A DNA stretch of 61,764 nt, the filler included, from Dugesia japonica (taxonomy: Eukaryota): the NCBI GenBank assembly GCA_001938525.1. It is 6 parts of 6 records of this genome, joined end to end, with 100 filler letters (N's around TTAATTAATTAA, not from the genome) between each part and the next. Parts side by side here need not be neighbours in the genome. Positions count along the whole stretch, not along the records: positions 10,012 to 22,563 come from MQRL01583170.1; 5 more parts are not named here. One strand, written 5' to 3'. Below, in pieces: positions 10,012 to 22,563 of the stretch. The notes beneath the pieces are model-generated. The model was given only the letters and a program-made list of their open reading frames with translations. It did not search any database and was not told the DNA's origin. Both the position numbers and the translations under genes were made by a program. The number at the start of each line of letters is the position of its first letter. Positions within the stretch are counted from its first letter, which is position 1.

Positions 10012-10450
10012 CTAGTTGGGGTGTCCAGAAAATCATATAAAAGGACCCCCAGTTTCAAATGAAATAATCACCAAATTTTCACTTTACTAAGTCGTGGAAC
10101 CACACATAAAATTTCTTTACTAGAACTTGTACGACGAGATTTGTTACAGAAGAATCGATTGCGAAGTTATAAACTCCATTGGTAAGGTCCAAAAACAATA
10201 TTAACTTTGGTCATCAACCTAATTTTAGAACTAAAGAACAAAAAAGGAAAACCGAATTTCAAACGCTATTGAGTTAAACCAGTATTGACAGATCGTACTC
10301 TCCGTAAAACATTCAAGCTCGTTGCAGAAACCTCCTCATCGACTATTCTTAGTTGCTGATTCAATCAATAGACTTATATTGGAAAGTAATTATTTTAGTT
10401 TAAATTGCATGTAAATGTTAATGCTCATCTTATGAAAAATGTTTGTCATG

Positions 10451-12060
10451 AAAATAATTAAATCATATTTTTAGTCAACTTGCATTTTATTAAACAATTG
10501 TTTTTTTACTCTTAGTTAAAATGTATGAATAACTAGCCAAAAGCTTAATTAATGAATTATAAAAAATGTCCAGTCTATATTTTATTTAACATAGTTTATA
10601 TTATATAATTGGGATACTCTTAGTTAAACTACAGACACAACTACCCAAATTAATAGATAATTTATATATTTCTTATACGGGTTGCATTTTTCTAACCGGA
10701 AATCTTATGAAATAAATTTTGAGGTTTTTAAATAAAGAATCGAACCAAAACATTCACTGGGTAATTAGGCCAATATACAGTTTGGGATGAATACAAATCT
10801 TACTAAATGATGTTGATGTTTTTTAATTACAGCATCTATTCCAAAAAAGTCTAGCCAAACCGTCGAGCGATGAATATGAAAAAAAATATGTGCCATCAAA
10901 TTCGACATTGATATCTTACTGACCCTAAACTGTCTAAAATAATGCTGATGGGTCGACTTAAAGTATGTGTCACAGTAANCTGAAAAAGAAGAATATTAAA
11001 TTTCCCCTTGAGTAGCATACCCGACTTTACCCAATTCAACCACTAAGATTGAGTCCCCTAATTGTATCATGGTGTAACGAATTGGAATAAATAATGGTTA
11101 AGATTCTACGTCGGGTAGTTATTCATCAACACTCCACTGAATATGACTGAAATGTCCACGTAATTCTGTTTCACAAAAAGAAATTGATACTAAAAAATCC
11201 GTTATGCCACGGCTGTAGTAAATTGATTTTAGGCTGTTACNNNNNNNNNNNNNNNNNNNNNNNNNNNNNNNNNNNNNNNNNNNNNNNNNNAAATAATTAA
11301 ATCATATTTTTAGTCAACTTGCATTTTATTAAACAATTTTTTTTTACTCTTAGTTAAGATGTATTAATGAATTATGAAAAATGTCCAGTCTATATTTTAT
11401 TTAACATAATTTATATTATATAATTTGGATACTCTTAGTTAAACTACAGACACCACTACCCAAATTAATAGATAATGAAAATTTTTTTATATATTTCTTA
11501 TATGGGTTGCATATTTTTTTTTTAACCGGAAATCTTATGAAATAAGTTTTGAGGTTTTTAAAATAAGAATCTAACCAAAACATTCAATGAGTAATTAGGC
11601 AAATATACAGTTTGGGATGAATATAAATCTTATTAAGTGATGTTGATGTTTTTTTTACAGCATCTACCCCAAAAAGTCTCGCCAAACCATCGAGCGATAA
11701 TAAAAAAAATATATGTGCCATCACATTCGTCATTGATATCTTACTGAACCTAAACTGTCAAACATAATGCTGATGGGTCGACTTAAAGTATGTGCACGGT
11801 AATCTGAAAAAGAAAAATATTAAATTTCCCTTGAGTATCATATTTGACTTTACCCAATTCAACCACTAAGATCTAGTTCCCTAATTGTATCATGGTGTAA
11901 CGAATTGGAATAAATAATGGTTAAGATTCTTAGTCGGGTAATTATTCATCAACACTCCACTGAATATGACTGAAATGTCCACGTAATTTTGTTTCACAAA
12001 AAGAAATTGATACAAAAAATCCGTTATGCCACGGCTGTAGTAAATTGATTTTAGGCTGTG
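10451..12060 (+). repeat. ~790-bp direct duplication (10451-11240 and 11291-12060)
   Basis: Near-identical colinear text (AAATAATTAAATCATATTTTTAGTCAAC...GATTTTAGGCTGT) either side of a 50-N gap, with scattered substitutions/indels. Confidence 0.93.
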
Positions 12061-13252
12061 ACTTATAATTGGCGATGCAATTATTAATCATAGATAATTA
12101 TCCGTGAGTACGTTTGCTCAGCGAAAACAAGAAATTCTAAACCATAACTAGTCGATATTCTATAATACTAAAACTTACAACAATTCCACTGTCAATTCGT
12201 AAGCTCGCATTAAGGGAACCAAATATTAACTCGTGAAAATAATAAGCAATTGATTCAACAATAAATGAACTAACACACATTAATTATATTAAATGGTATA
12301 CAGTTAGGCATCATAACAAAATATATCCAACAAGCAGCAGCATGAATCTATGATAGTTAAAATGTCCAACATCAGTGAATGAATTCAGTATAATCATTAT
12401 ATGATCCAAATTCGTACATCATATTCCTGAAGACGTGAATAAATAATTTAGTCAATAATCAATACCAACATACCTGAAGATAGTTTCCTGATATAAAATA
12501 TTCAGCGAAAAGCAAAACCGATGAATCCTCGAGTAGTAAAATATTCTCATAAACCAGGAGAGTTATTGTATTACCCAATTTCATAAATGACATATTTCTA
12601 AGAAATATTACTAAAATCATCTATGTATTAAATAATGTCAACATACCCGTGTGTAGAGTGGAATGCGGTGAGAATTGACTCGACACACACACTCGGAATT
12701 CCAATTAGAAAATATTGTTGTGCATGCATGATTATGACCTTGGGGCAACCAAGGGCAACTCAGGTTTTGCGGAAAGTTCAATGTATAAAAAGGAGATAAG
12801 TTGGGATAAATACATAAGATGGAACTTACTTAAAATTAATAAATCTTTTGTAAAACAATTAGGTACTATTCATAATGCGACGGGATTCTACCGGTTATTA
12901 AAAATTTAAAACTCATTTTTTATAATTAACTTATTAATAATACTAATAATAATAGTGATGGCGGTAATAAATGGTAATAATAATAATAATCATGATAATG
13001 AATAATACTATTAATGATAATAACAATATCAATGCTAACCAATAGTTCTAATCGTAATAATAATGATAATAATAATAAGGATAATAAATAATAATGATCA
13101 TAACAATCATAACAATAAATAACGACAAGGTTAACGATACTAATAATATTCGAATCAAATGATAACTCGTCTTCAGATTTCTAGGGCGTCCTCCCCTTCT
13201 AAACAATTACGTAATTTACTTGAAAAATTGCAGTAACGATTTTTTTTCAGCG

Positions 13253-13441
13253 ATGACTGCCAGATTACGAAACATGCTGAGGTGGATTAGAAAACAGGGT
13301 CAATCTGGCAGAGCTAAACAATTAGTGGCGCACTACGTGACCAAAGGGGCCGTGGAGCACTACGATGAAACGGACCTACAGTGTTTCGTCGAGATGTTTC
13401 CGCTCGTTCCGCACATTTTCACCCTTGAATGTCTCATTTAG
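13253..13441 (+). CDS. Cassette copy 1 ORF-A, orphan 62-aa protein
   Basis: MTARLRNMLRWIRKQ...RAKQLVAHYVTKG.VEH.DETDLQCFVEMF aligns with 18470-18652; acceptor tttttttcag just before ATG. Confidence 0.7.
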   Translation: MTARLRNMLRWIRKQGQSGRAKQLVAHYVTKGAVEHYDETDLQCFVEMFPLVPHIFTLECLI

Positions 13442-13564
13442 TTCTGTGTACTATTAAATAAAATAAATTTACCGTTAGATTAAATGGAGTTAATGATTGT
13501 TAGCACCGTCTTTATTACATTATATCGTTGAGTAATAATATTTATCTTTTATAGGCTTTAAGGA

Positions 13565-13927
13565 ATGGAATTTGTATGGGACGTAACTCTGGACTAACCA
13601 CTTTTAAGAAATTTAGAAATCCCTACAATCAAGACGCGGGAGTTTTAGTGGATCGCTCCAACGTGTCGTCCGAGCAGGCCGAATATGATCGTCATTGGGA
13701 CGAAACAGAGAGGGCCGCTTACTATCATTGGCGTGGTCCGAGGAGGGACAGGCTAAGTTAATCACCCACATATGATTCTGCATCCACCCCGCGTATCGAA
13801 CGGGTTTGGTCCGAAAATCCTACGATAGTTGGTCTTACTACGACCCATTTACCCCCGTATCCGCAGCTCTCGTCATTCATTCAAAATAGTTTGTGGAACG
13901 AGCGAAATGCTCTTAATTATCGAAATG
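13565..13927 (+). pseudogene. Cassette copy 1 ORF-B (frameshift/stops)
   Basis: MEFVWD..., FKKFRNPYNQDAGVLVDRSNV, SSFIQNSLWNER match MESMWE, FRRYHNPHNRDAGILVDRSNL, QAFIANMLWGVR of 18787-19137. Confidence 0.7.
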
Positions 13928-14111
13928 ANNNNNNNNNNNNNNNNNNNNNNNNNNNNNNNNNNNNNNNNNNNNNNNNNNNNNNNNNTTTTATTGATTTGAA
14001 ATTCATGTTGTTGTTCAATTAATTCATTATAATAATTCTTGGTGTCTTTAATAAAATCTTTCGCCTGAATCATGAATAAAAATTAATCATACTTTATTTT
14101 TTTTTCACATA

Positions 14112-14480
14112 GTGCATTCATCACTCAATCGTCCACCCGCTCCAACTAAGAAAATCCGGGAGGGTAGTGAGGACATAGAAATGTCCTGGAACTTATACCG
14201 GTTAGCGAAGCGGCGTTGGGAGGCCGATGTAGCAACCGCGGCCGCCAAAGTGAAAAGATATAAAGACAAATGTGCTAACATTCGACAAGAGATGAAATTG
14301 GTCCAAGAACAAGAACGGGTATGGAAAGCCCAAGTAGAATCCTTCGCGGAAATCATCCAGTCCAGCCATGACCGGGAAAATAAACTGGTGAAAGACATTG
14401 TCAATCTTAAGGATAAAATGTATCTTGAGCCTCTTATGATTGATAAGGGCACACAGACCAAAAACGTTTCACGACCATGA
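14112..14480 (+). CDS. Cassette copy 1 ORF-C, predicted coiled-coil protein
   Basis: HSSLN...WNLYRLAKRRWEADV...HDRENKLV.DI..LK...PLMIDKG aligns with 19272-19582. Confidence 0.72.
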   Translation: MHSSLNRPPAPTKKIREGSEDIEMSWNLYRLAKRRWEADVATAAAKVKRYKDKCANIRQEMKLVQEQERVWKAQVESFAEIIQSSHDRENKLVKDIVNLKDKMYLEPLMIDKGTQTKNVSRP

Positions 14481-14715
14481 TCTGATCTTTATGTATAAAT
14501 ATAAATATCACTCTTTGCTCCTTGATTGATTTGAGGTTTCAGTCTGTTGATAATTTTATAATTGTTGAAAAGTCTACTTATTAATTTGAGTTTTAAGACG
14601 GTTGTTAATCTTAGAATTGTTGGAGAAATTCTACTTTAAAGTAAATNNNNNNNNNNNNNNNNNNNNNNNNNNNNNNNNNNNNNNNNNNNNNNNNNNNNNN
14701 NNNNNNNNNNNNNNN

Positions 14716-15047
14716 GCCATCTCCTCATCGAGCGTCATTTAAAAAGAAAAGCAGATAAGGCCTTGTTAAAACATCTCGATCAACGTGACTGATTAATCAA
14801 GAAGCTTGATCTTGTCATAAAGAAGCATACAGACCTCGCAAATCAAACAAAAGCGTTAGAGACAGAAAATAAACTTCTCCTCCAACGCAAAATAGAGTTC
14901 CTCAAGCAATACATCTCCGACTTGTCGCGTCAACTGGGAAATCCCAATATATCTCAGTGGGATGACGATGACGATATCGCGGCCTTTAACCTGATCGTCA
15001 CGTCCCCTGATCAATGGCTAGATCCAGAAGCCTTGAATTTATTATAA
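14716..15047 (+). pseudogene. Cassette copy 1 ORF-D (start in gap, one internal stop)
   Basis: LLIERHLKRKADKA...QRKIEFLKQYISDLSRQLGNP...QWLDPEAL aligns with 19702-20100; AATAAA at 15061. Confidence 0.72.
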
Positions 15048-15293
15048 CTATGTATTGTCAAATAAACACTTTCATTAGAAGAATCAAGACTGGTAATTAT
15101 CGTAAAATAATCATAGGGAAATATATAGAACCCGAACAAAAGGTTTATGGGTGTGCACCTTCCATCAAGGGTAAGGTCAACCGCCATAAACTGAAAACCT
15201 ACCATAGGGACGGTAGGGTTAAATTCTTGAAAGGGTTCCCCTGAGGACTGTTTTTCCCCAGTCATCTTTTTTCCAACTCAGGTGGAGCCCCAA

Positions 15294-15295
<2 letters not shown>

Positions 15296-15340
<45 letters not shown>

Positions 15341-15390
15341 NNNNNNNNNNNNNNNNNNNNNNNNNNNNNNNNNNNNNNNNNNNNNNNNNN

Positions 15391-15449
<59 letters not shown>
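15296..15449. repeat. (TTA)n microsatellite between two element termini
   Basis: Pure TTA repeat with internal N gap. Confidence 0.97.
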
Positions 15450-15450
<1 letters not shown>

Positions 15451-15702
15451 GTTGGGGTCATGGGAGATATGGCTCAAAAATGATATTACGCACAACCCAC
15501 AACTGGGATTTAATATACTCGTCCTTGAGTATGTTGATGGCAGCCCCGGTGACTCTTACCCGACGTTAAGAGTGCATGAGCGCACTATCTGCATGTTATT
15601 TGGGCTCGTTTACCGTGGCGATAGAAGCCAATTTTTTCGATAAAATGAAATTAATATTAAATGATATTTTATAAATACTGTACATCATCATTACAAATAG
15701 GG

Positions 15703-16093
15703 TCAATCGTCATCAAAACATAAATTAATAAATGTTCGGCGGGCTTTCTTTGGAGGTGAAATACCCAATGAGGGGGATGGAGAGTCCAATTGTAATTGCC
15801 ACAAGCCCTCATTTTCGTTTCGAAGCCATTTGACCCACGCTTCTAACTTCCAAATCTTCATTCCCTGAGACTCTCCGGGTATATTCAATATTTTGTTTTC
15901 TTAAGGCTGAAACCTCTACCACTAACATCGCTATCTTTTCCTGTATAGATTTACTGGTTTGTGACCAATTTGTTGTTGTGGCAAGCTGACTGTCCGTGTT
16001 GGTGGAAAACTGAACTGCAGCTCCGAATGTTCGACTAGGACGACTGTCGAAAAGCTGTCGGTTCCGGGGCAGTTCTGGAGTGTTTTTATTCAT
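15703..16093 (-). pseudogene. Orphan coiled-coil ORF (one frameshift) reading toward the TGTTGGGG terminus at 15450
   Basis: ORFs 15809-16093 and 15703-15888 overlap as a frameshifted pair; acceptor ctttag|ATG; C-terminal basic PPKKARR. Confidence 0.5.
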
Positions 16094-16137
16094 CTAAAGT
16101 ATTTCTGAATTTTAATTAATTTATTATCACAATATAA

Positions 16138-16140
<3 letters not shown>

Positions 16141-16172
<32 letters not shown>

Positions 16173-16213
16173 TATAATAATAATCATCATAATAATAATC
16201 ATAATAATAATAA
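16141..16213. repeat. (AAT)n microsatellite followed by TGTTGGGG terminus at 16214
   Basis: Direct reading. Confidence 0.9.
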
Positions 16214-18469
16214 TGTTGGGGCGAAACACCCAGAAGAATGGAAATCAATGGGTTATGAATAACCCAATATCAAAATAGAAATTACGAGAAGCAACATGGT
16301 AAGATAAACAAGTATGGAAAATCCAGACAATAAAATTGAGCGAAAAATGGAAAACTCGGAAGATCAAATTAACTGTGATTAATTATGCTAATTGCAAAAT
16401 TAATAAAATTATTAAAGAAAATAAGTAACAAAAGAAATAAATACAAAAAAAATAAATCATTTAAACGAAAAATTAATTAAAATTGAGACAAAATCTGTTT
16501 TATGCAAATAACTCTGGTCAGGAAAGTCGGAAGAAATCCAGGTGAGACAATATGAAAAGAAAACCACAAGAGGATGAAACTTGCTAGGAAGAAAAAACTT
16601 ACCACCATCCAGAGGGTTACTGCAGGGTTTCCTATATCGAACCAATCAGATATCTAAAAATAAAATAAAACAAAGACACAATTATCATGTGCCAGTCTAA
16701 AAATAACTTCTGATCAGAACTCCAGAATTCTCGGAAGATTTGCACCAGATCCAATAGATCAAATAATTTAAATTAAAAATAACCAGCCAACAGGAATACT
16801 GTCGGGATGCAACTAAAGGCAAATATAAGCCGCAACAAACTTAGGTGAAAAAACAATAATAAAGAACTTTTAATAACAACTGAGCTTAGAAGCTATACTC
16901 TCGATTTGAAAAATTATTTAGCGAATATTACTGGTCTAAAATTATTATAAAGTTGGTAAATAAGATTCATTGTAGAATTACAGGAAGCCGANGAGAAAAT
17001 TACAATCAGGAAGGGAGAATTATTCACAAGTCAGATACTCTCAAAATTATCCGAGAATTTGCCAGTCATTGAAAAAACCTTTGCAGAAAGCCTTCAGTTA
17101 ATAACAAAAAATAAAATATTATTTTGATTGGGTAAAAGTGGTATATTTGATAAACTATGTATATTATTTATTCTAATAAAATTAGTTCCTGTTTCAAAAT
17201 CGTAAACTCTTGATTTTCTAATTTAGAAATATTGAATGATGAATAAATTATAAATCACTTGGTAAGAAACTAAATTCAAAATTCCTTGAAACCATTGATC
17301 CTTGTCGTTGAATAAAATAAATAATAGGATATGCGCGAGTATAGTAAATCAAAAAAAATCTTGTATATTTCGGGATTAATCAGAAAACAATAACCGGATT
17401 ATAGAATTTGAATAAGTTTAATCTCCTTCAATAATTTTATGATCTATGTCTAGTTGTATAATCAGATAATCAATAAGGAAAATAAATTCCAACTATTTAT
17501 TGAGAAAATTAATAAATTATAACTCCCTCCCCTTGACTTGAACTATAAATAGCCATAGAGAGCTCAGTGATAAAATAATTTCCAAAATATCAGTAACGCT
17601 CGCTGTTCAGCTAAAATCCACTTGATCATTATTGGCAGCAAAATTCCGTGACCAAACTCTGAAGGAGTGAGATATACCAAACTGGTTATGCACGATACAA
17701 AATAACCAAACTGGTTTATCTAAATTATGAAAACCCGATAGGACGACCAGGTTTGACGAATTCAGAGTCATACTATTAGCAGGTGTGTATATAATATGTC
17801 GATTTACTCATAGTAGTTATTTGATGCCGTCTACTTAAATCGGAATCCCTGATATTACACATCTACACTATATTAAATTAATAAACACACTTACCAACAC
17901 CAATAAAATCAGTATAATTAAACCACATCACTAGTCAACTACAACAAACGTAAATTCAAACTTAGTATAAAAAGGAAATTTTTTGCTGTTGTACTTTTAC
18001 TATCATTATTCTATTATTATTGATCTTGTATTAGTTATGCTAAATCAGTGTTACGGGGATTCAGAGCATTAGTAATGATGAAAGCATTTGAGCGGAATGG
18101 GGATCAACCTATTGAAGCAATCAAGGATTTAAGAAAAAAATTAATTGACTATTTATTATTCAGGATCGGCATTGTTGATACTACCCGAACTAACACCACC
18201 GGTATGGTCATGTTTTCGGTTGTCACAAGGTGTATCTTTAATAATGATTAAAATGATTTTACATTACTACATGCAATGNTGGTGACACTAATTATTACTT
18301 TTTATCCTCCTTACCAAGCTGTTATGGCCTTAATTCATAACCTCCCGTTGTGATTATAGTTTTCATGTTACAATCTTTAGCGATAATAACGGTCCGGGGA
18401 AATTATTTAATCAGGGAAAATGAGGCGAGTGGTAAAGACTGCAGTTAATTTTTTTTCTTCCTTTAGCTC

Positions 18470-18652
18470 ATGCCAACAGAATTGTATAGGGCCCTGCGAT
18501 GGATAAGGAAGCAACGTCAAATTAGCAGGTCGAAACAATTAATAGCTCATTTGCTGACCAGAGGAGAGATCGAGCACCCCGATAAAACCGACCTTCAATG
18601 CTTTGAGGAGATGTTTTCGTTGGAATTAGGGGTCGACTTAGATGAAAAATGA
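18470..18652 (+). CDS. Cassette copy 2 ORF-A, orphan 60-aa protein
   Basis: LRWIRKQ..SR.KQL.AH..T.G..EH.D.TDLQCF.EMF shared with copy 1; acceptor cttcctttag. Confidence 0.7.
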   Translation: MPTELYRALRWIRKQRQISRSKQLIAHLLTRGEIEHPDKTDLQCFEEMFSLELGVDLDEK

Positions 18653-18786
18653 TATTTTATTGACTACCCGACGATAAAACAATATCTATGAAAAAACTTG
18701 GTGTTTTGTTTTAATTAATTAGATGAGTGATTTTTGATGTTTTAATGCTGTGTTTGAATTTTCTTATTTTCTTTTGTTTCTTAGAA

Positions 18787-19137
18787 ATGGAGTCAATGTG
18801 GGAGAGGACAGTAGACAGGTGTACCCGCCGAATCATTTTCCGGCGATACCACAATCCACACAATCGCGATGCGGGGATTTTAGTAGACCGATCCAACCTA
18901 CCTCCCGTAGAAGCGGCTGTTGCTCTTATTCAAAGCTTGGTGGAGCGTCTGACCTTCCGCCAGTGGAATAGGCCGGAGCGTAACCACGCCACTCCATTCC
19001 GTTACCAACCTCCAGCTCCCACACCCATAGTTCAGGCTTTCATTGCCAATATGCTCTGGGGAGTTAGGGAGCCTTCCAGGGTAGTGAATGCGGAAAATAC
19101 GGCTCCTGTGATTGAAAATGATAATAACTCCCCATAA
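18787..19137 (+). CDS. Cassette copy 2 ORF-B, orphan ~116-aa protein
   Basis: Intact frame from MESMWERT; acceptor ttgtttcttag 2 nt before ATG; homolog at 13565. Confidence 0.7.
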   Translation: MESMWERTVDRCTRRIIFRRYHNPHNRDAGILVDRSNLPPVEAAVALIQSLVERLTFRQWNRPERNHATPFRYQPPAPTPIVQAFIANMLWGVREPSRVVNAENTAPVIENDNNSP

Positions 19138-19271
19138 GTTCTGTCTTTTACTTGAAAATATAAATAGGTGTCTTTTTATTATGATTTGTATTATAGTTGC
19201 TTGCGTGGGTTTAGATAAATTGTTGTCATTGTTGACTTTTGTAATCTTCATAATTAATACAATTATTTCAG

Positions 19272-19582
19272 TACACTCCTCTCTGAACAAATCACATGGT
19301 ACCTGTATAGATTAGCCAAACATCTTTTGGTAAGCCGATGTCACTAATGCAGAGGCGAAGATTAAGCGTTACAAAAGGAAATGTTTATCTTTCAAAACAG
19401 AAGCTGAGGCCTCTCATCAACAAGAGAGGCCACGGAAAGACCAATTAGAATCCCTGTTCGAGATTATCCGGTCCTGCCATGACCGAGAAAATAAACTGGT
19501 CAACGACATACTAAAGCTAAAGAAGATGATGCCTTTAGCTCCTCTCATGGTTGACAAAGGTGTGCAGGCCCCTCTTTCCTAG
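19272..19582 (+). pseudogene. Cassette copy 2 ORF-C (frameshifts/stop)
   Basis: HSSLNK, WYLYRLAK, ADVTNAEAKIKRYK, HDRENKLVNDILKLK, PLMVDKG; AATAAA at 19602. Confidence 0.72.
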
Positions 19583-19701
19583 TTGTTGTCATAACATGCT
19601 TAATAAAAAAAAAATTTTTTTTCCGTCTTTTCAATTAATCCGAAATTAATTACATTACTCTCTATAAATTACGAATAGCCATCGATTAATTCTTTTCTTA
19701 A

Positions 19702-20100
19702 GTGCTAATGATAAAATTTCCCAATAATTTACGTCGTTGTCATCGTATCATGAAACGACTCTTGATAGAACGACATCTAAAAAAGAAGGCTGACCAAGCC
19801 ATCCTCAAGCATTTGGCCCAAAAAGATAAGTTAATAAAGCGATTAGCCCTAGTCGTAAAGAAGCAGAGCAGACTTGGCGATTCAAACTAAGGCTTTAGAA
19901 GCAGAGACGAAACAACTTTGCAAAGGAAGATCGAATTCCTTAAACAATACATCGCCGATCTCTCCCGCCAAATAGGCAATCCAGCTTGGATTCAGTGGGA
20001 CGAAAACGACGATATCGCTGATTTTAACCTTTTGGTCACCGATCCGGCCCAGTGGTTAGACCCAGGGGCGCTGGATTTGTTAAAAATAATTTTTTTTTAA
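19702..20100 (+). pseudogene. Cassette copy 2 ORF-D (one internal TAG)
   Basis: ORFs 19702-19890 and 19918-20100 are one frame; homolog at 14716; AATAAA at 20101. Confidence 0.72.
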
Positions 20101-21488
20101 AATAAAATATATATAATTAACACCGTATTTTCTCTCTTTTACTGATAATACTAAGGAAAATAATGAACCTAAATACAAAGGTTTATGTGTGTTTACCTCC
20201 CATTAAGAGAGAGGTCAAGCGCCATGAACCGAATACCTGTCTAGGGGCGGGAGATTAAATTCTTGAATGGATTCCCCTGAGGGCTGTTTTTCCTCGGCCA
20301 CCGTTTCCTTATCATCCAACTNNNNNNNNNNNNNNNNNNNNNNNNNNNNNNNNNNNNNNNNNNNNNNNNNNNNNNNNNNNNNNNNNNNNNNNNNNNNNNN
20401 NNNNNNNNNNNNNNNNNNNNNNNNNNNNNNNNNNNNNNNNNNNNNNNNNNNNNNNNNNNNNNNNNNNNNNNNNATGGTCATGATAATATTAACAATAATG
20501 AGTAGAAATATGAATAGTGATGTTAATAGTGTTAATAATAATAGTATTAGTGTGAATTAGTAATAATATACATTGATTCTTCTTGATGGATGATATAATA
20601 TTTAAGGAGTCAAAGCATGGTTCGTAAAGTTTGTTAATGACTAGGATATTCAGGAATAAGAAACGAAAAAAACTTATTTATAACATTAATATATAATATA
20701 ATAGTCAATAGATAATAATAATAATTACGAAAACGATATTAAATCTCGATAAAGTATTTTAAAGTTAAAATATTAGAAAAATCAAAAATAACTAAATAAA
20801 CAAGGTTATTTTTCAATACATTTAATTTTTAAATATGCATAAGATTGACTAATACTAATATACCTCTTGACTGCTATGCTTGAACTGGAACAATAAATAT
20901 TGACTTGGGGATGACGAAAAATCGATAGAATTGTAATTGAATAGGATTAGGAATTTGAAACTGTATTGTTTGCTTTTCCGAATTGTTTATTCTTGGAAGA
21001 TACGAGGGATTGAGAATTTGTATTCTTGTTATGACTGAAACGAACTTAGAGCAACGATATAAATGATTTGGTGTTGGTATTGTCCAAGAGAATTTTCGAA
21101 ATAATGAAGTTTCTCGATTAAATTTGCTACTGGATGGAAATGGTATTTATACTGCGAAGTCGATGATTGATTTTGATTCTTGGCAGGTTAATTTCTTGGA
21201 TTTGCGAAATGAATGGACTACTTTCTTATGGCTAAATTGATACATGTGTCACACGCTTCTTTTTCGAAATATAGAAATAATTGATAAAATTATTCAGAAG
21301 ACTGGAAAAAACGCAATAATAATCGCATCTTATTTACTGAATCTATGAACCCCCGACAACAATCTCTCTCTCATGCTCAGTTAAAATTCAACACTTTGAT
21401 TTTACTCTAATGAAAACAATTATAATTTAAAATACTTAATCAACATCCATTTATATTTATTTCGATTTTTACTGCTTCATCACAGCAG

Positions 21489-21807
21489 TTAGACATCCAG
21501 ATCTACTGTTTGCTCCATTGTTTTGGCTGATTCTCCTGACGTCCGGTAATTCGACCACAATGTTCTCAGGGTGTGGAACATTGTGGCCTCACGGTCGGCA
21601 TATATCTTAATAACATCGGCCATAAGACGGTTGGCTTGCTGGAGAGCCAACTCCTTCTCCTTCAGCTGTGTGAACTTTGACGATGACCTATTCAGTTGTC
21701 TTTTTAAATTCAGAATCTCGTTGCGCAAATCGCGCTCTTGTCCTTCCACCTTCGCTTCGCTGCTACTACATCTCTTTTCAGTATTTTTTTGTCATTCGAT
21801 TTGTTCA
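21489..21807 (-). pseudogene. Orphan coiled-coil ORF
   Basis: EAKVEGQERDLRNEILNLKRQLNR...LKEKELALQQANRLM heptad-like pattern; GC-richer than flanks; upstream tttag acceptor. Confidence 0.45.
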
Positions 21808-22379
21808 CTAAAATTTAGACATAATTTAATTGTAATAGATTTTTCTAAAACAAGTGAATAAAATTAATTAAAAGAAATAACAATTGTAGTTTAAAGTACC
21901 TTACAAAGGAATAAAATTGTTTGCTATCTAAAGTAATTAAAATTCACTCAACATTTGTACTTTAACACAAGCAAAATAGTAACTAAATAAGATCGTTGAA
22001 ACCCTTACTTATTAATTTAATTATTAATAAATTAAACCTATAGAAATTAATGACTTTTTTAAATTACGTATTACAGTGGTTTTTATATTCAAAATCAGAA
22101 ATATCTCAATGAAGATATCGCAGTAGTGGTTGAAAAAATTTGAAATAAGCGATAGAGATAAAATTGCGAAATTATATCATAAAATTGTCATGTTAAATAT
22201 CTATGAATTAAAAATCTCTGACGATAAATATACACGTTTATATTTATATTTATAATCTCAACAATAAAAAATACTATTTCTTAATTAAATACAGCCATCC
22301 AACATATCATAGTACTAGAATTAAATGCTAGATTAAAGGGATTCGACTCTAGCTTGAGTGTATCAATTGTATGGTATTA

Positions 22380-22563
22380 ACTGTTAATATGTAGCTTCGG
22401 TGTATCATATTAAAGACCAGTTTGAACATTAATTTTTGGATCAATTGATCAAATCATCAATGCTTCACACACCACTCTATCCCAATAAACTTTAAAGTTT
22501 TTGCACAAAATTTGAAAATTATTTATACTGATAACTGATTTGCAATTAATGTTATGTTCAGCA
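22380..22563 (-). mobile_element. Penelope-like element GIY-YIG C-terminal fragment
   Basis: AEHNINCKSVISINNFQILCK...DRVVCEALMI*SIDPKINVQ fits H..C...NF.IL...R...EAL.I...P.LN.Q. Confidence 0.7.

What the first reader, a model, noticed from the sequence alone, without database searches (positions are those of the whole stretch)
13200..20321. Duplicated four-gene orphan cassette (A-B-C-D) under purifying selection: candidate new gene-carrying mobile element
Seen: two colinear, same-strand copies (13253-15295; 18470-20321) of four small ORFs and a shared terminal segment. In a 21-codon block of ORF-D (QRKIEFLKQYI[S/A]DLSRQ[L/I]GNP), 19 residues are identical and 12 of those codons differ synonymously, so the proteins were conserved while the DNA diverged. 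Stops and frameshifts differ between copies, as expected for dead insertions of two subfamilies. I recognise no transposase, RT, integrase or capsid motif. Inference: an accessory-gene module inside a very long LTR or terminal region of a giant Gypsy-type element (planarian Burro-like), a Ginger-type TGT...ACA element, or an undescribed virus-like element.
Basis: partly seen in the sequence, partly recalled or inferred. Interest (0 to 1): 0.88.

Follow-up and report, generated by a model that had tools for sequence, protein, structure and literature searches.

The report
Duplicated four-ORF orphan cassette with RNA tail
Two old, partly decayed copies of a 2-kb unit lie 5 kb apart; each unit has four small unknown protein genes and a conserved folded RNA tail, selection clearly kept the proteins, but nothing here shows that the unit is a mobile element.

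Summary
Two colinear + strand copies (about 13223-15286 and 18434-20321) share four protein blocks (37-78% amino-acid identity). They also share a non-coding tail of about 130 nt. Silent sites are saturated (pS 0.69 or more) and pN is 0.17-0.41, so the proteins were under purifying selection.

New here:
- Four of seven candidate ORF starts sit 2-5 nt after a polypyrimidine-AG acceptor (P about 3e-5). This is the layout of cistrons in a spliced-leader operon, not of internal exons.
- The tail is about 77% identical although silent sites are random. It shows no codon periodicity. It folds into three + strand hairpins kept by compensatory and wobble changes.

No mobile-element hallmark was found in the 12.5-kb piece: no TIR, no LTR-sized repeat, and no RT, integrase, transposase or capsid domain. 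No relative was found in any protein, structure, RNA-family, viral or metagenome search.

Both copies carry a few stops or frameshifts, so an intact source probably exists elsewhere.

Most likely this is an ancient tandem duplicate of a lineage-specific operon-like locus. The rival is an RT-less retroposon-like cassette that uses a LINE-type 3' tail. Copy number in the source genome would decide between them and could not be tested here.

The parts
13223..13252 (+). Copy 1: short conserved segment upstream of ORF A, a T-run ending in AG 2 nt before the ATG
   Evidence: Local alignment of the two upstream regions finds only this stretch of about 25 nt; read directly.
13253..13441 (+). Copy 1 ORF A, open, 62 aa
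   Evidence: omega about 0.10; no Pfam family.
13576..13928 (+). Copy 1 ORF B, broken (one in-frame stop); 3' end lost in the assembly gap 13929-13985
   Evidence: the copy 2 B protein aligns through to the edge of the gap.
14181..14480 (+). Copy 1 ORF C, open, 99 aa from the ATG, predicted coiled coil
   Evidence: only weak sub-threshold coiled-coil Pfam matches (ADIP, BRE1); omega about 0.16.
14716..15047 (+). Copy 1 ORF D, broken (one in-frame stop); 5' end lost in the assembly gap 14647-14715
   Evidence: AlphaFold2 gives one long helix over residues 2-47 and a low-confidence C-terminus.
15136..15272 (+). Copy 1 non-coding tail: three + strand hairpins and an invariant 13-nt single-stranded stretch
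   Evidence: it begins 95 nt after the stop of D in both copies.
15287..15461 (.). GCCCCAAC-(ATT)n-GTTGGGG microsatellite directly after the tail of copy 1, interrupted by the gap 15341-15390; it may belong to the cassette or to a neighbouring inverted-repeat unit
   Evidence: (I15).
18434..18469 (+). Copy 2: conserved upstream segment, polypyrimidine tract and AG 3 nt before the ATG of A
18470..18652 (+). Copy 2 ORF A, open, 60 aa
18787..19137 (+). Copy 2 ORF B, open, 116 aa; ATG 2 nt after a strong acceptor-like site
   Evidence: no homologue; AlphaFold2 confidence is low.
19271..19582 (+). Copy 2 ORF C, broken near its 5' end (one frameshift, one in-frame stop, start codon out of frame)
19708..20100 (+). 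Copy 2 ORF D, broken (two frameshifts that cancel out); ATG 5 nt after a strong acceptor-like site
20174..20321 (+). Copy 2 tail, the same three hairpins; cut off by the assembly gap 20322-20473

Best explanation
This is an ancient tandem duplicate of a lineage-specific, operon-like host locus.

What each unit holds (shown):
- About 2 kb with four short same-strand cistrons: A about 60 aa, B about 116 aa, C about 100 aa and D about 115-130 aa.
- C is a predicted coiled coil. D is a long leucine-rich helix followed by a conserved acidic and aromatic C-terminal motif.
- A structured RNA element of about 130 nt starts 95 nt after the last stop.

How it probably works (inferred):
- The + strand is transcribed as one precursor.
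- Each cistron is released by spliced-leader trans-splicing at the polypyrimidine-AG site a few bases before its ATG, and by 3' end formation at the A/T-rich hexamers after each stop.
- The small helical proteins act together, perhaps as a coiled-coil complex.
- The three-hairpin tail acts in cis on the RNA (3' end, stability or localisation), or it is a small RNA gene that was duplicated along with the cassette.

History (inferred): the two copies separated so long ago that only constrained sequence still aligns. Both have since picked up a few inactivating changes. At least one intact relative is therefore expected elsewhere, for example in a birth-and-death tandem family.
For: - The copies are adjacent, in the same orientation, 5.0-5.2 kb apart and colinear.
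- Similarity is confined to the coding blocks and the tail. The spacers do not align, as expected once pS is saturated.
- Omega is 0.1-0.3.
- Four of seven candidate ORF starts have a polypyrimidine-AG 2-5 nt before the ATG, against about 3% of all ATGs in the piece; binomial P is about 3e-5.
- Every block ends at a stop within about a dozen codons of the end of conservation.
- The ORF blocks are 42-55% GC and the spacers 20-30%.
- The tail has no mod-3 mismatch pattern. Hairpin 1 has z = -2.9 and -6.4. The compensatory and G-U changes work only on the + strand.
- No transposon or virus hallmark was found: TIR scores are at the level of shuffled sequence, there is no LTR-size repeat, and there are no Pfam enzyme or capsid domains.
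Against: - Both copies are broken (two and about four breaks). For just two host paralogues kept by selection for so long, that is an odd coincidence. It fits dead copies of a multi-copy family better.
- A non-coding tail conserved above silent sites, lying past AATAAA hexamers and followed by a microsatellite, is the classic look of a LINE or SINE 3' end.
- The duplicated unit has sharp ends, and the GC-rich ORFs flanking the two copies are unrelated.
- Operons made only of orphan genes are unusual.
- No spliced-leader or transcript data are available, and the organism is unknown.
- The ATGs were chosen after inspection.
Confidence: 0.42

Rival explanations
1. These are two dead insertions of a non-autonomous, RT-less retroposon-like cassette. 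The four cistrons are its cargo or structural genes. The three-hairpin tail plus a terminal (ATT)n is the handle that a partner LINE's reverse transcriptase recognises. That would make it comparable to ORF1-only non-LTR elements and to SINEs that share the 3' tail of a LINE.
For: - The tail is conserved at about 77% while silent sites are random. It is structured on the + strand and followed 15-20 nt later by (ATT)n in copy 1. In copy 2 an assembly gap sits at the matching place.
- Stringent-type LINEs recognise just such a 3' stem-loop plus terminal repeat (PMC1636434, PMC4176376).
- Both copies are decayed yet differ by selected divergence, the usual picture for copies of old subfamilies.
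- The unit has sharp borders and unrelated flanks.
- Coiled-coil proteins are typical of LINE ORF1 (own knowledge).
Against: - No RT or endonuclease is present in the piece, and there is no ORF1-family Pfam match.
- No partner element is known, and no third tail exists in the piece.
- A target-site duplication cannot be tested, because the 3' end of copy 2 is in a gap.
- The (ATT)n may belong to a neighbouring inverted-repeat unit at 15287-16222.
- Two anciently diverged subfamilies landing 3 kb apart, in the same orientation and both with the same complete 5' end, is improbable unless there is a strong insertion preference.
- The AT-rich spacers with acceptor sites are retained, so the RNA copied would have to be the unprocessed precursor.
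Confidence: 0.3
2. A to D are four exons of one cis-spliced gene for a coiled-coil protein of about 400 aa, and the pair are ordinary tandem paralogues. This is a rival only to the four-cistron part of the main reading.
For: - The exon/intron-like alternation in GC content.
- An acceptor-like AG before each block.
- In copy 1 a GT directly after the conserved end of A would join in frame to the acceptor of B (reading).
Against: - No shared GT donor exists at the conserved ends of A or C in both copies.
- An in-frame ATG lies near the start of every block that can be seen, four of them 2-5 nt after the AG.
- Protein conservation runs on to just before each stop.
- I did not build or search a joined A-D protein. 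Each block was searched on its own by reference.
Confidence: 0.2
3. The cassette is an accessory module inside a much larger element that runs beyond this piece: a giant Gypsy or Burro-like LTR element, a Ginger-type DNA transposon, or an integrated virus.
For: Giant retroelements do carry accessory ORFs, including coiled-coil ones (PMC6431247, PMC5408684). The ORFs here are orphans.
Against: - There are no LTR-size repeats, no TIRs, and no gag, pol, integrase, transposase or capsid remnants anywhere in 12.5 kb.
- The two copies are not LTRs of one element, because their divergence was shaped by selection.
- Sequence beside the two copies is unrelated, so the shared unit is only about 2 kb.
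- Burro encodes one very large polyprotein (PMC6431247), not small cistrons.
- There were no hits in IMG/VR or BFVD.
Confidence: 0.07
4. The pair is an assembly artefact, with two haplotypes or a collapsed repeat placed in tandem.
For: The piece is a gapped draft with single N calls. A different direct repeat of 89% identity at 10452-12062 is split only by a gap.
Against: The copies are about 70% identical in DNA with saturated silent sites, and they are separated by 3 kb of unrelated sequence. That is far beyond allelic divergence.
Confidence: 0.01

Closest known systems
Spliced-leader trans-spliced operons (nematodes, flatworms, tunicates and others)
   Same: Same-strand short cistrons 125-170 nt apart. 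Each ATG lies a few bases after a polypyrimidine-AG acceptor. A/T-rich poly(A)-signal-like hexamers follow each stop. SL trans-splicing in a flatworm is described in PMC5832876.
   Different: No spliced-leader or transcript evidence is available, and the organism is unknown. All four genes are orphans. The unit is duplicated and decayed, and it carries a conserved structured tail.
3' tails of stringent-type LINEs and their SINE partners (eel UnaL2, zebrafish LINEs); ORF1-only non-LTR elements such as Drosophila HeT-A and mammalian HAL1 (the latter two from my own knowledge)
   Same: A conserved 3' stem-loop element followed by a simple repeat, better conserved than the coding part. Coiled-coil-rich ORFs without a reverse transcriptase (PMC1636434, PMC4176376).
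   Different: No similarity to any LINE ORF1 or ORF2 family. There are four cistrons instead of one. No partner LINE, target-site duplication, 5' truncation or copy-number evidence. Ownership of the (ATT)n is uncertain.
Giant retroelements with accessory ORFs (planarian Burro/GYPSM1, rotifer Terminons and LTR elements)
   Same: These mobile elements can carry extra ORFs of unknown function, some of them coiled-coil (PMC6431247, PMC5408684).
   Different: They are defined by LTRs or telomeric repeats and by gag/pol or RT. None of these is present in this piece, and the shared unit here is only about 2 kb.
Lineage-specific tandem gene families evolving by birth and death
   Same: Adjacent same-strand paralogues, deep divergence under purifying selection, and some members that are pseudogenes.
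   Different: Only two members are visible here, and the conserved non-coding structured tail is unusual for such families.

Membership tests
LTR retrotransposon (Gypsy / Burro-like) | Paired long terminal repeats bounding the element | tested here: not met
   The only long direct repeats in the piece are the cassette pair itself and an unrelated 0.8-kb repeat at 10452-12062. The cassette pair diverged under selection, not neutrally.
LTR retrotransposon (Gypsy / Burro-like) | gag and pol domains (protease, RT, RNase H, integrase) | tested here: not met
   No such Pfam match in the ORFs or in any stop-free segment of 38 aa or more in 10012-22563. An element reaching beyond the piece cannot be excluded.
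Ginger-type or other cut-and-paste DNA transposon | Terminal inverted repeats at the borders of the unit | tested here: not met
   The best alignments of the 5' end against the reverse-complemented 3' end score 16 and 19. Shuffled sequence gives a median of 15 and a 95th percentile of 19-20. The 3' border of copy 2 is in a gap.
Ginger-type or other cut-and-paste DNA transposon | DDE transposase or integrase | tested here: not met
Non-LTR retrotransposon or LINE-dependent retroposon | Reverse transcriptase and endonuclease ORF, or a partner LINE with the same tail | tested here: not met
   No RT or endonuclease in the piece. A partner elsewhere in the genome cannot be tested with these tools.
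Non-LTR retrotransposon or LINE-dependent retroposon | Conserved structured 3' tail ending in a simple repeat or poly(A) | tested here: inconclusive
   Three conserved + strand hairpins are present in both copies. (ATT)n follows copy 1. The end of copy 2 is in a gap, and the (ATT)n may belong to the inverted-repeat unit at 15287-16222.
Non-LTR retrotransposon or LINE-dependent retroposon | Many dispersed copies with target-site duplications and variable 5' truncation | not testable with these tools
   The source genome is not in any searchable collection. The two copies share the same 5' end.
Spliced-leader operon | Same-strand cistrons with short spacers and a 3' splice acceptor just upstream of each start codon | tested here: met
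   The spacers are about 125-170 nt. Four of seven candidate starts have a polypyrimidine-AG 2-5 nt before the ATG, against about 3% background; P is about 3e-5.
Spliced-leader operon | Spliced-leader sequence on the mature mRNAs, and an organism that trans-splices | not testable with these tools
   No transcript data are available and the organism is unknown. No SL RNA or snRNA family was found in the piece.
Endogenous viral element | Recognisable viral hallmark protein (capsid, polymerase, glycoprotein) or relatives in virus collections | tested here: not met
   Pfam found none. IMG/VR gave none, apart from one chance 22-residue match lying between stop codons. BFVD Foldseek gave nothing below E = 6.

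The most novel reading that the evidence does not exclude
The cassette is a new kind of gene-carrying, non-autonomous retroelement. It would be a four-cistron unit with no reverse transcriptase, expressed like a host spliced-leader operon and copied in trans through a LINE-type three-hairpin 3' tail. Its small coiled-coil proteins would be kept by selection across anciently diverged subfamilies.
Probability: 0.25. Interest if true: 0.75.

Novelty: new variant of a known kind. Interest (0 to 1): 0.42.

Why it matters
If the unit proves to be dispersed and mobile, it would be a rare case of a retroposon-like element that carries several selected protein genes but no polymerase. It would also show a mobile unit using host operon processing.

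If it is a host locus, it adds a lineage-specific four-gene operon with an unusually conserved structured RNA beside it. That is of local interest for the biology of the species.

Either way, the four proteins and the tail have no known relatives. Their function can only be approached by expression and distribution data.

Tried and rejected
- **Protein and structure searches, all empty or spurious.**
  - Pfam on all cassette ORFs and on 50 other stop-free segments gave only sub-threshold coiled-coil noise.
  - An HMM profile of D against 1.84 billion representative proteins gave one hit at E 3e-4. It lies in a threonine- and serine-rich 2917-aa repeat protein and is judged spurious.
  - Word-indexed searches with C, B and the minus-strand ORF 21492-21791 found nothing.
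  - Exact-protein look-ups were not on record.
  - PDB sequence searches gave only a designed repeat protein with no passing stretch.
  - AlphaFold2 of D and B had low confidence, and Foldseek against BFVD and PDB found nothing.
- **Collection scans.**
  - IMG/VR, JGI metagenome and GTDB scans used D, C, A and a tail motif.
  - The two metagenome loci share only the 22-nt pattern.
  - The one viral locus matches 22 residues lying between stop codons.
- **RNA families.** Rfam found nothing at gathering threshold for the piece, or at E up to 1 for the tail. No tRNA was found.
- **More copies or internal paralogy.**
  - No third copy of any block or of the tail exists in the piece.
  - A, B, C and D are not related to each other.
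  - The minus-strand ORFs downstream of each copy are unrelated to each other and to C.
- **The tail as a coding exon.** Rejected: stops occur in most frames and the mismatches show no periodicity.
- **Gene conversion as the cause of tail conservation.** Rejected: silent sites in D, only 95 nt upstream, are saturated.
- **An alternative genetic code as the cause of the in-frame stops.** Rejected: all three stop codons also end the ORFs.

Full report
**Scope.** Only 10012-22563 is real sequence. It has 33% G+C, ten N runs and no ORF longer than 136 aa. The organism is not known. Nothing in the piece matched any named family that could place it.

**Gaps first.**
- Gap 13929-13985: the flanks are unrelated to each other and to the matching region of copy 2. 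The B frame of copy 1 runs into the gap while still aligning with the copy 2 protein, so the 3' end of B is hidden.
- Gap 14647-14715: the first letters after it are already inside the conserved D block, and the sequence before it matches nothing in copy 2. The 5' end of D in copy 1, including its start, is hidden.
- Continuity or frame across these two gaps cannot be shown, and I assumed none.
- Gap 15341-15390 lies inside a pure (ATT)n run.
- The gap 20322-20473 cuts the end of the copy 2 tail.

- Self-comparison at DNA and protein level finds two colinear + strand copies and no third.
- Block A is 61% identical in protein, B 37%, C 57% and D 61-78%. A tail of about 130 nt is about 77% identical in DNA.
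- The offset between the copies falls from 5217 to 5036 nt along the unit.
- The distance from the stop of D to the tail is 95 nt in both copies.
- Per block, pS is 0.69-1.09 (saturated) and pN is 0.17-0.41. Omega is about 0.10 for A, 0.16 for C and 0.30 for B. The excess of third-position changes is seen only in the stated frames.
- The four proteins were therefore kept by selection over a very long time.
- The spacers between the blocks do not align.

**State of the copies (counts only).**
- Copy 1: A and C are open. B and D each have one in-frame stop. The gaps remove one end of B and one end of D.
- Copy 2: A and B are open. C has one frameshift and one in-frame stop near its start. D has two frameshifts that cancel out.
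- Six breaks in about 2.4 kb, three of them stops, are too many to blame on draft errors alone. Some of the frameshifts could still be errors.
- The few breaks, against a very deep selected divergence, mean that both copies went out of use recently compared with their split.

**Four cistrons rather than four exons.**
- Every block that can be seen has an in-frame ATG near the start of conservation. Every block also has a stop within about a dozen codons of its end.
- For four of seven candidate starts the ATG lies 2-5 nt after a polypyrimidine tract ending in AG. Only about 3% of all ATGs in the piece have this, so the binomial P is about 3e-5. The starts were chosen after inspection.
- No GT donor is shared by the two copies at the conserved ends of A or C.
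- The spacers are 125-170 nt and carry AATAAA-like hexamers after the stops.
- This is the anatomy of a spliced-leader operon. The exon model is not excluded; I give it about 0.2.
Each was searched separately by reference.

**The proteins.**
- No Pfam family passes threshold. C gives only weak coiled-coil matches.
- AlphaFold2 makes the sequenced part of D one helix of 46 residues followed by a low-confidence C-terminus. That C-terminus holds the best-conserved motif.
- The B model has low confidence.
- Foldseek, PDB sequence searches, the 1.84-billion-protein profile search, three word-indexed searches, and the viral, metagenome and prokaryote genome scans gave nothing, or only chance hits that I checked and dismissed.
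- A, B, C and D are not related to each other.

**The tail.**
- It is about 77% identical although neutral sites are randomised. Its mismatches show no codon periodicity, and most frames on either strand contain stops. It is a constrained non-coding element.
- Both copies fold into the same three hairpins on the + strand. Hairpin 1 (53 nt) has z = -2.9 and -6.4 against shuffles.
- The differences between the copies include two-sided compensatory changes and several G-U exchanges. These keep the pairs only on the + strand, and the minus strand of copy 2 folds no better than shuffles.
- A 13-nt single-stranded stretch between hairpins 2 and 3 is invariant.
- Rfam has no match, and a covariance model of the tail finds no further copy in the piece.
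- Two sequences are few, so the structure is well indicated but not proven.

**Mobile-element hallmarks.**
- There are no terminal inverted repeats; scores are at the level of shuffled sequence.
- There is no LTR-sized repeat around either copy.
- No RT, endonuclease, integrase, transposase, gag or capsid domain occurs in any stop-free segment of 38 aa or more in the whole piece.
- The two copies cannot be the LTRs of one element, because LTRs diverge neutrally.
- The one feature that does look like a mobile element is the 3' end: structured tail, short linker, then GCCCCAAC-(ATT)n. This recalls stringent-type LINE and SINE tails (PMC1636434, PMC4176376).
- That microsatellite is also one arm of an inverted-repeat unit at 15287-16222 (I15), so it may not belong to the cassette. 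In copy 2 the matching place is a gap.

**Weighing the two main readings.**
- Adjacency, the same orientation and the same complete 5' end favour an old tandem duplication.
- Two broken copies with selected divergence, sharp unit borders with unrelated flanks, and the tail favour a multi-copy family with an intact source elsewhere.
- A tandem birth-and-death family of a host operon-like locus fits both sets of facts. It is my best reading (0.42).
- An RT-less retroposon-like cassette that uses a LINE-type tail is the main rival (0.30).
- A module of a giant LTR or DNA element or of an integrated virus is unlikely (0.07).
- An assembly artefact is excluded for practical purposes.
- The deciding fact is the copy number and distribution in the source genome, which these tools cannot reach.

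**Comparison with known systems.**
- The unit works like a spliced-leader operon. It passes the one defining feature of that kind that could be tested.
- It resembles LINE-dependent elements only at its 3' end. It fails the enzyme test.
- Giant elements with accessory ORFs (Burro, Terminons; PMC6431247, PMC5408684) are analogies only.
- I rate it a new variant of a known kind, with orphan components, and of moderate interest.

- While working, my private reasoning located some of the breaks by coordinate. The raw ORF and segment tables show segment bounds from which the stops can be read.
- I also recalled one spliced-leader sequence from memory in my reasoning.
- No repaired, joined or consensus sequence was built.

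Noticed in passing
10452-11240 and 11291-12062: A direct repeat of about 0.8 kb at 89% identity, with the two copies separated only by an assembly gap. It holds a 14-nt motif four times. It could be a satellite or minisatellite unit, or two haplotypes joined in tandem.
   Followed up: partly
15287-16222: A unit bounded by inverted ends, GCCCCAAC(ATT)n on the left and (AAT)nGTTGGGGC on the right (54-nt arms, 93% complementary). GTTGGGG also occurs at 15454. It encloses a minus-strand 94-aa ORF (15812-16093) with no homologue or Pfam match. It may be a foldback or MITE-like insertion, and it may own the (ATT)n next to the tail of copy 1.
   Followed up: partly
21492-21791, minus strand: A 100-aa stop-free, coiled-coil-like segment at 46% G+C. 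It has only sub-threshold Pfam matches and no homologue, and it is unrelated to ORF C or to the ORF at 15812-16093.
   Followed up: yes
12918-13150 and 20474-20750: Degenerate AAT-rich minisatellites lie just outside the pair, upstream of copy 1 and downstream of copy 2. A purer (AAT)n sits at 16137-16214.
   Followed up: no
15136-15272 and 20174-20308: The tail's layout is hairpin, hairpin, invariant U-rich single strand, hairpin. It recalls Sm-class small RNAs such as snRNAs or spliced-leader RNAs, but Rfam finds no such family at E up to 1.
   Followed up: partly
whole piece: G+C contrasts sharply: 42-55% in the ORF blocks and a few other islands (15487-16086, 21487-21786), against 10-30% elsewhere.
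   Followed up: no
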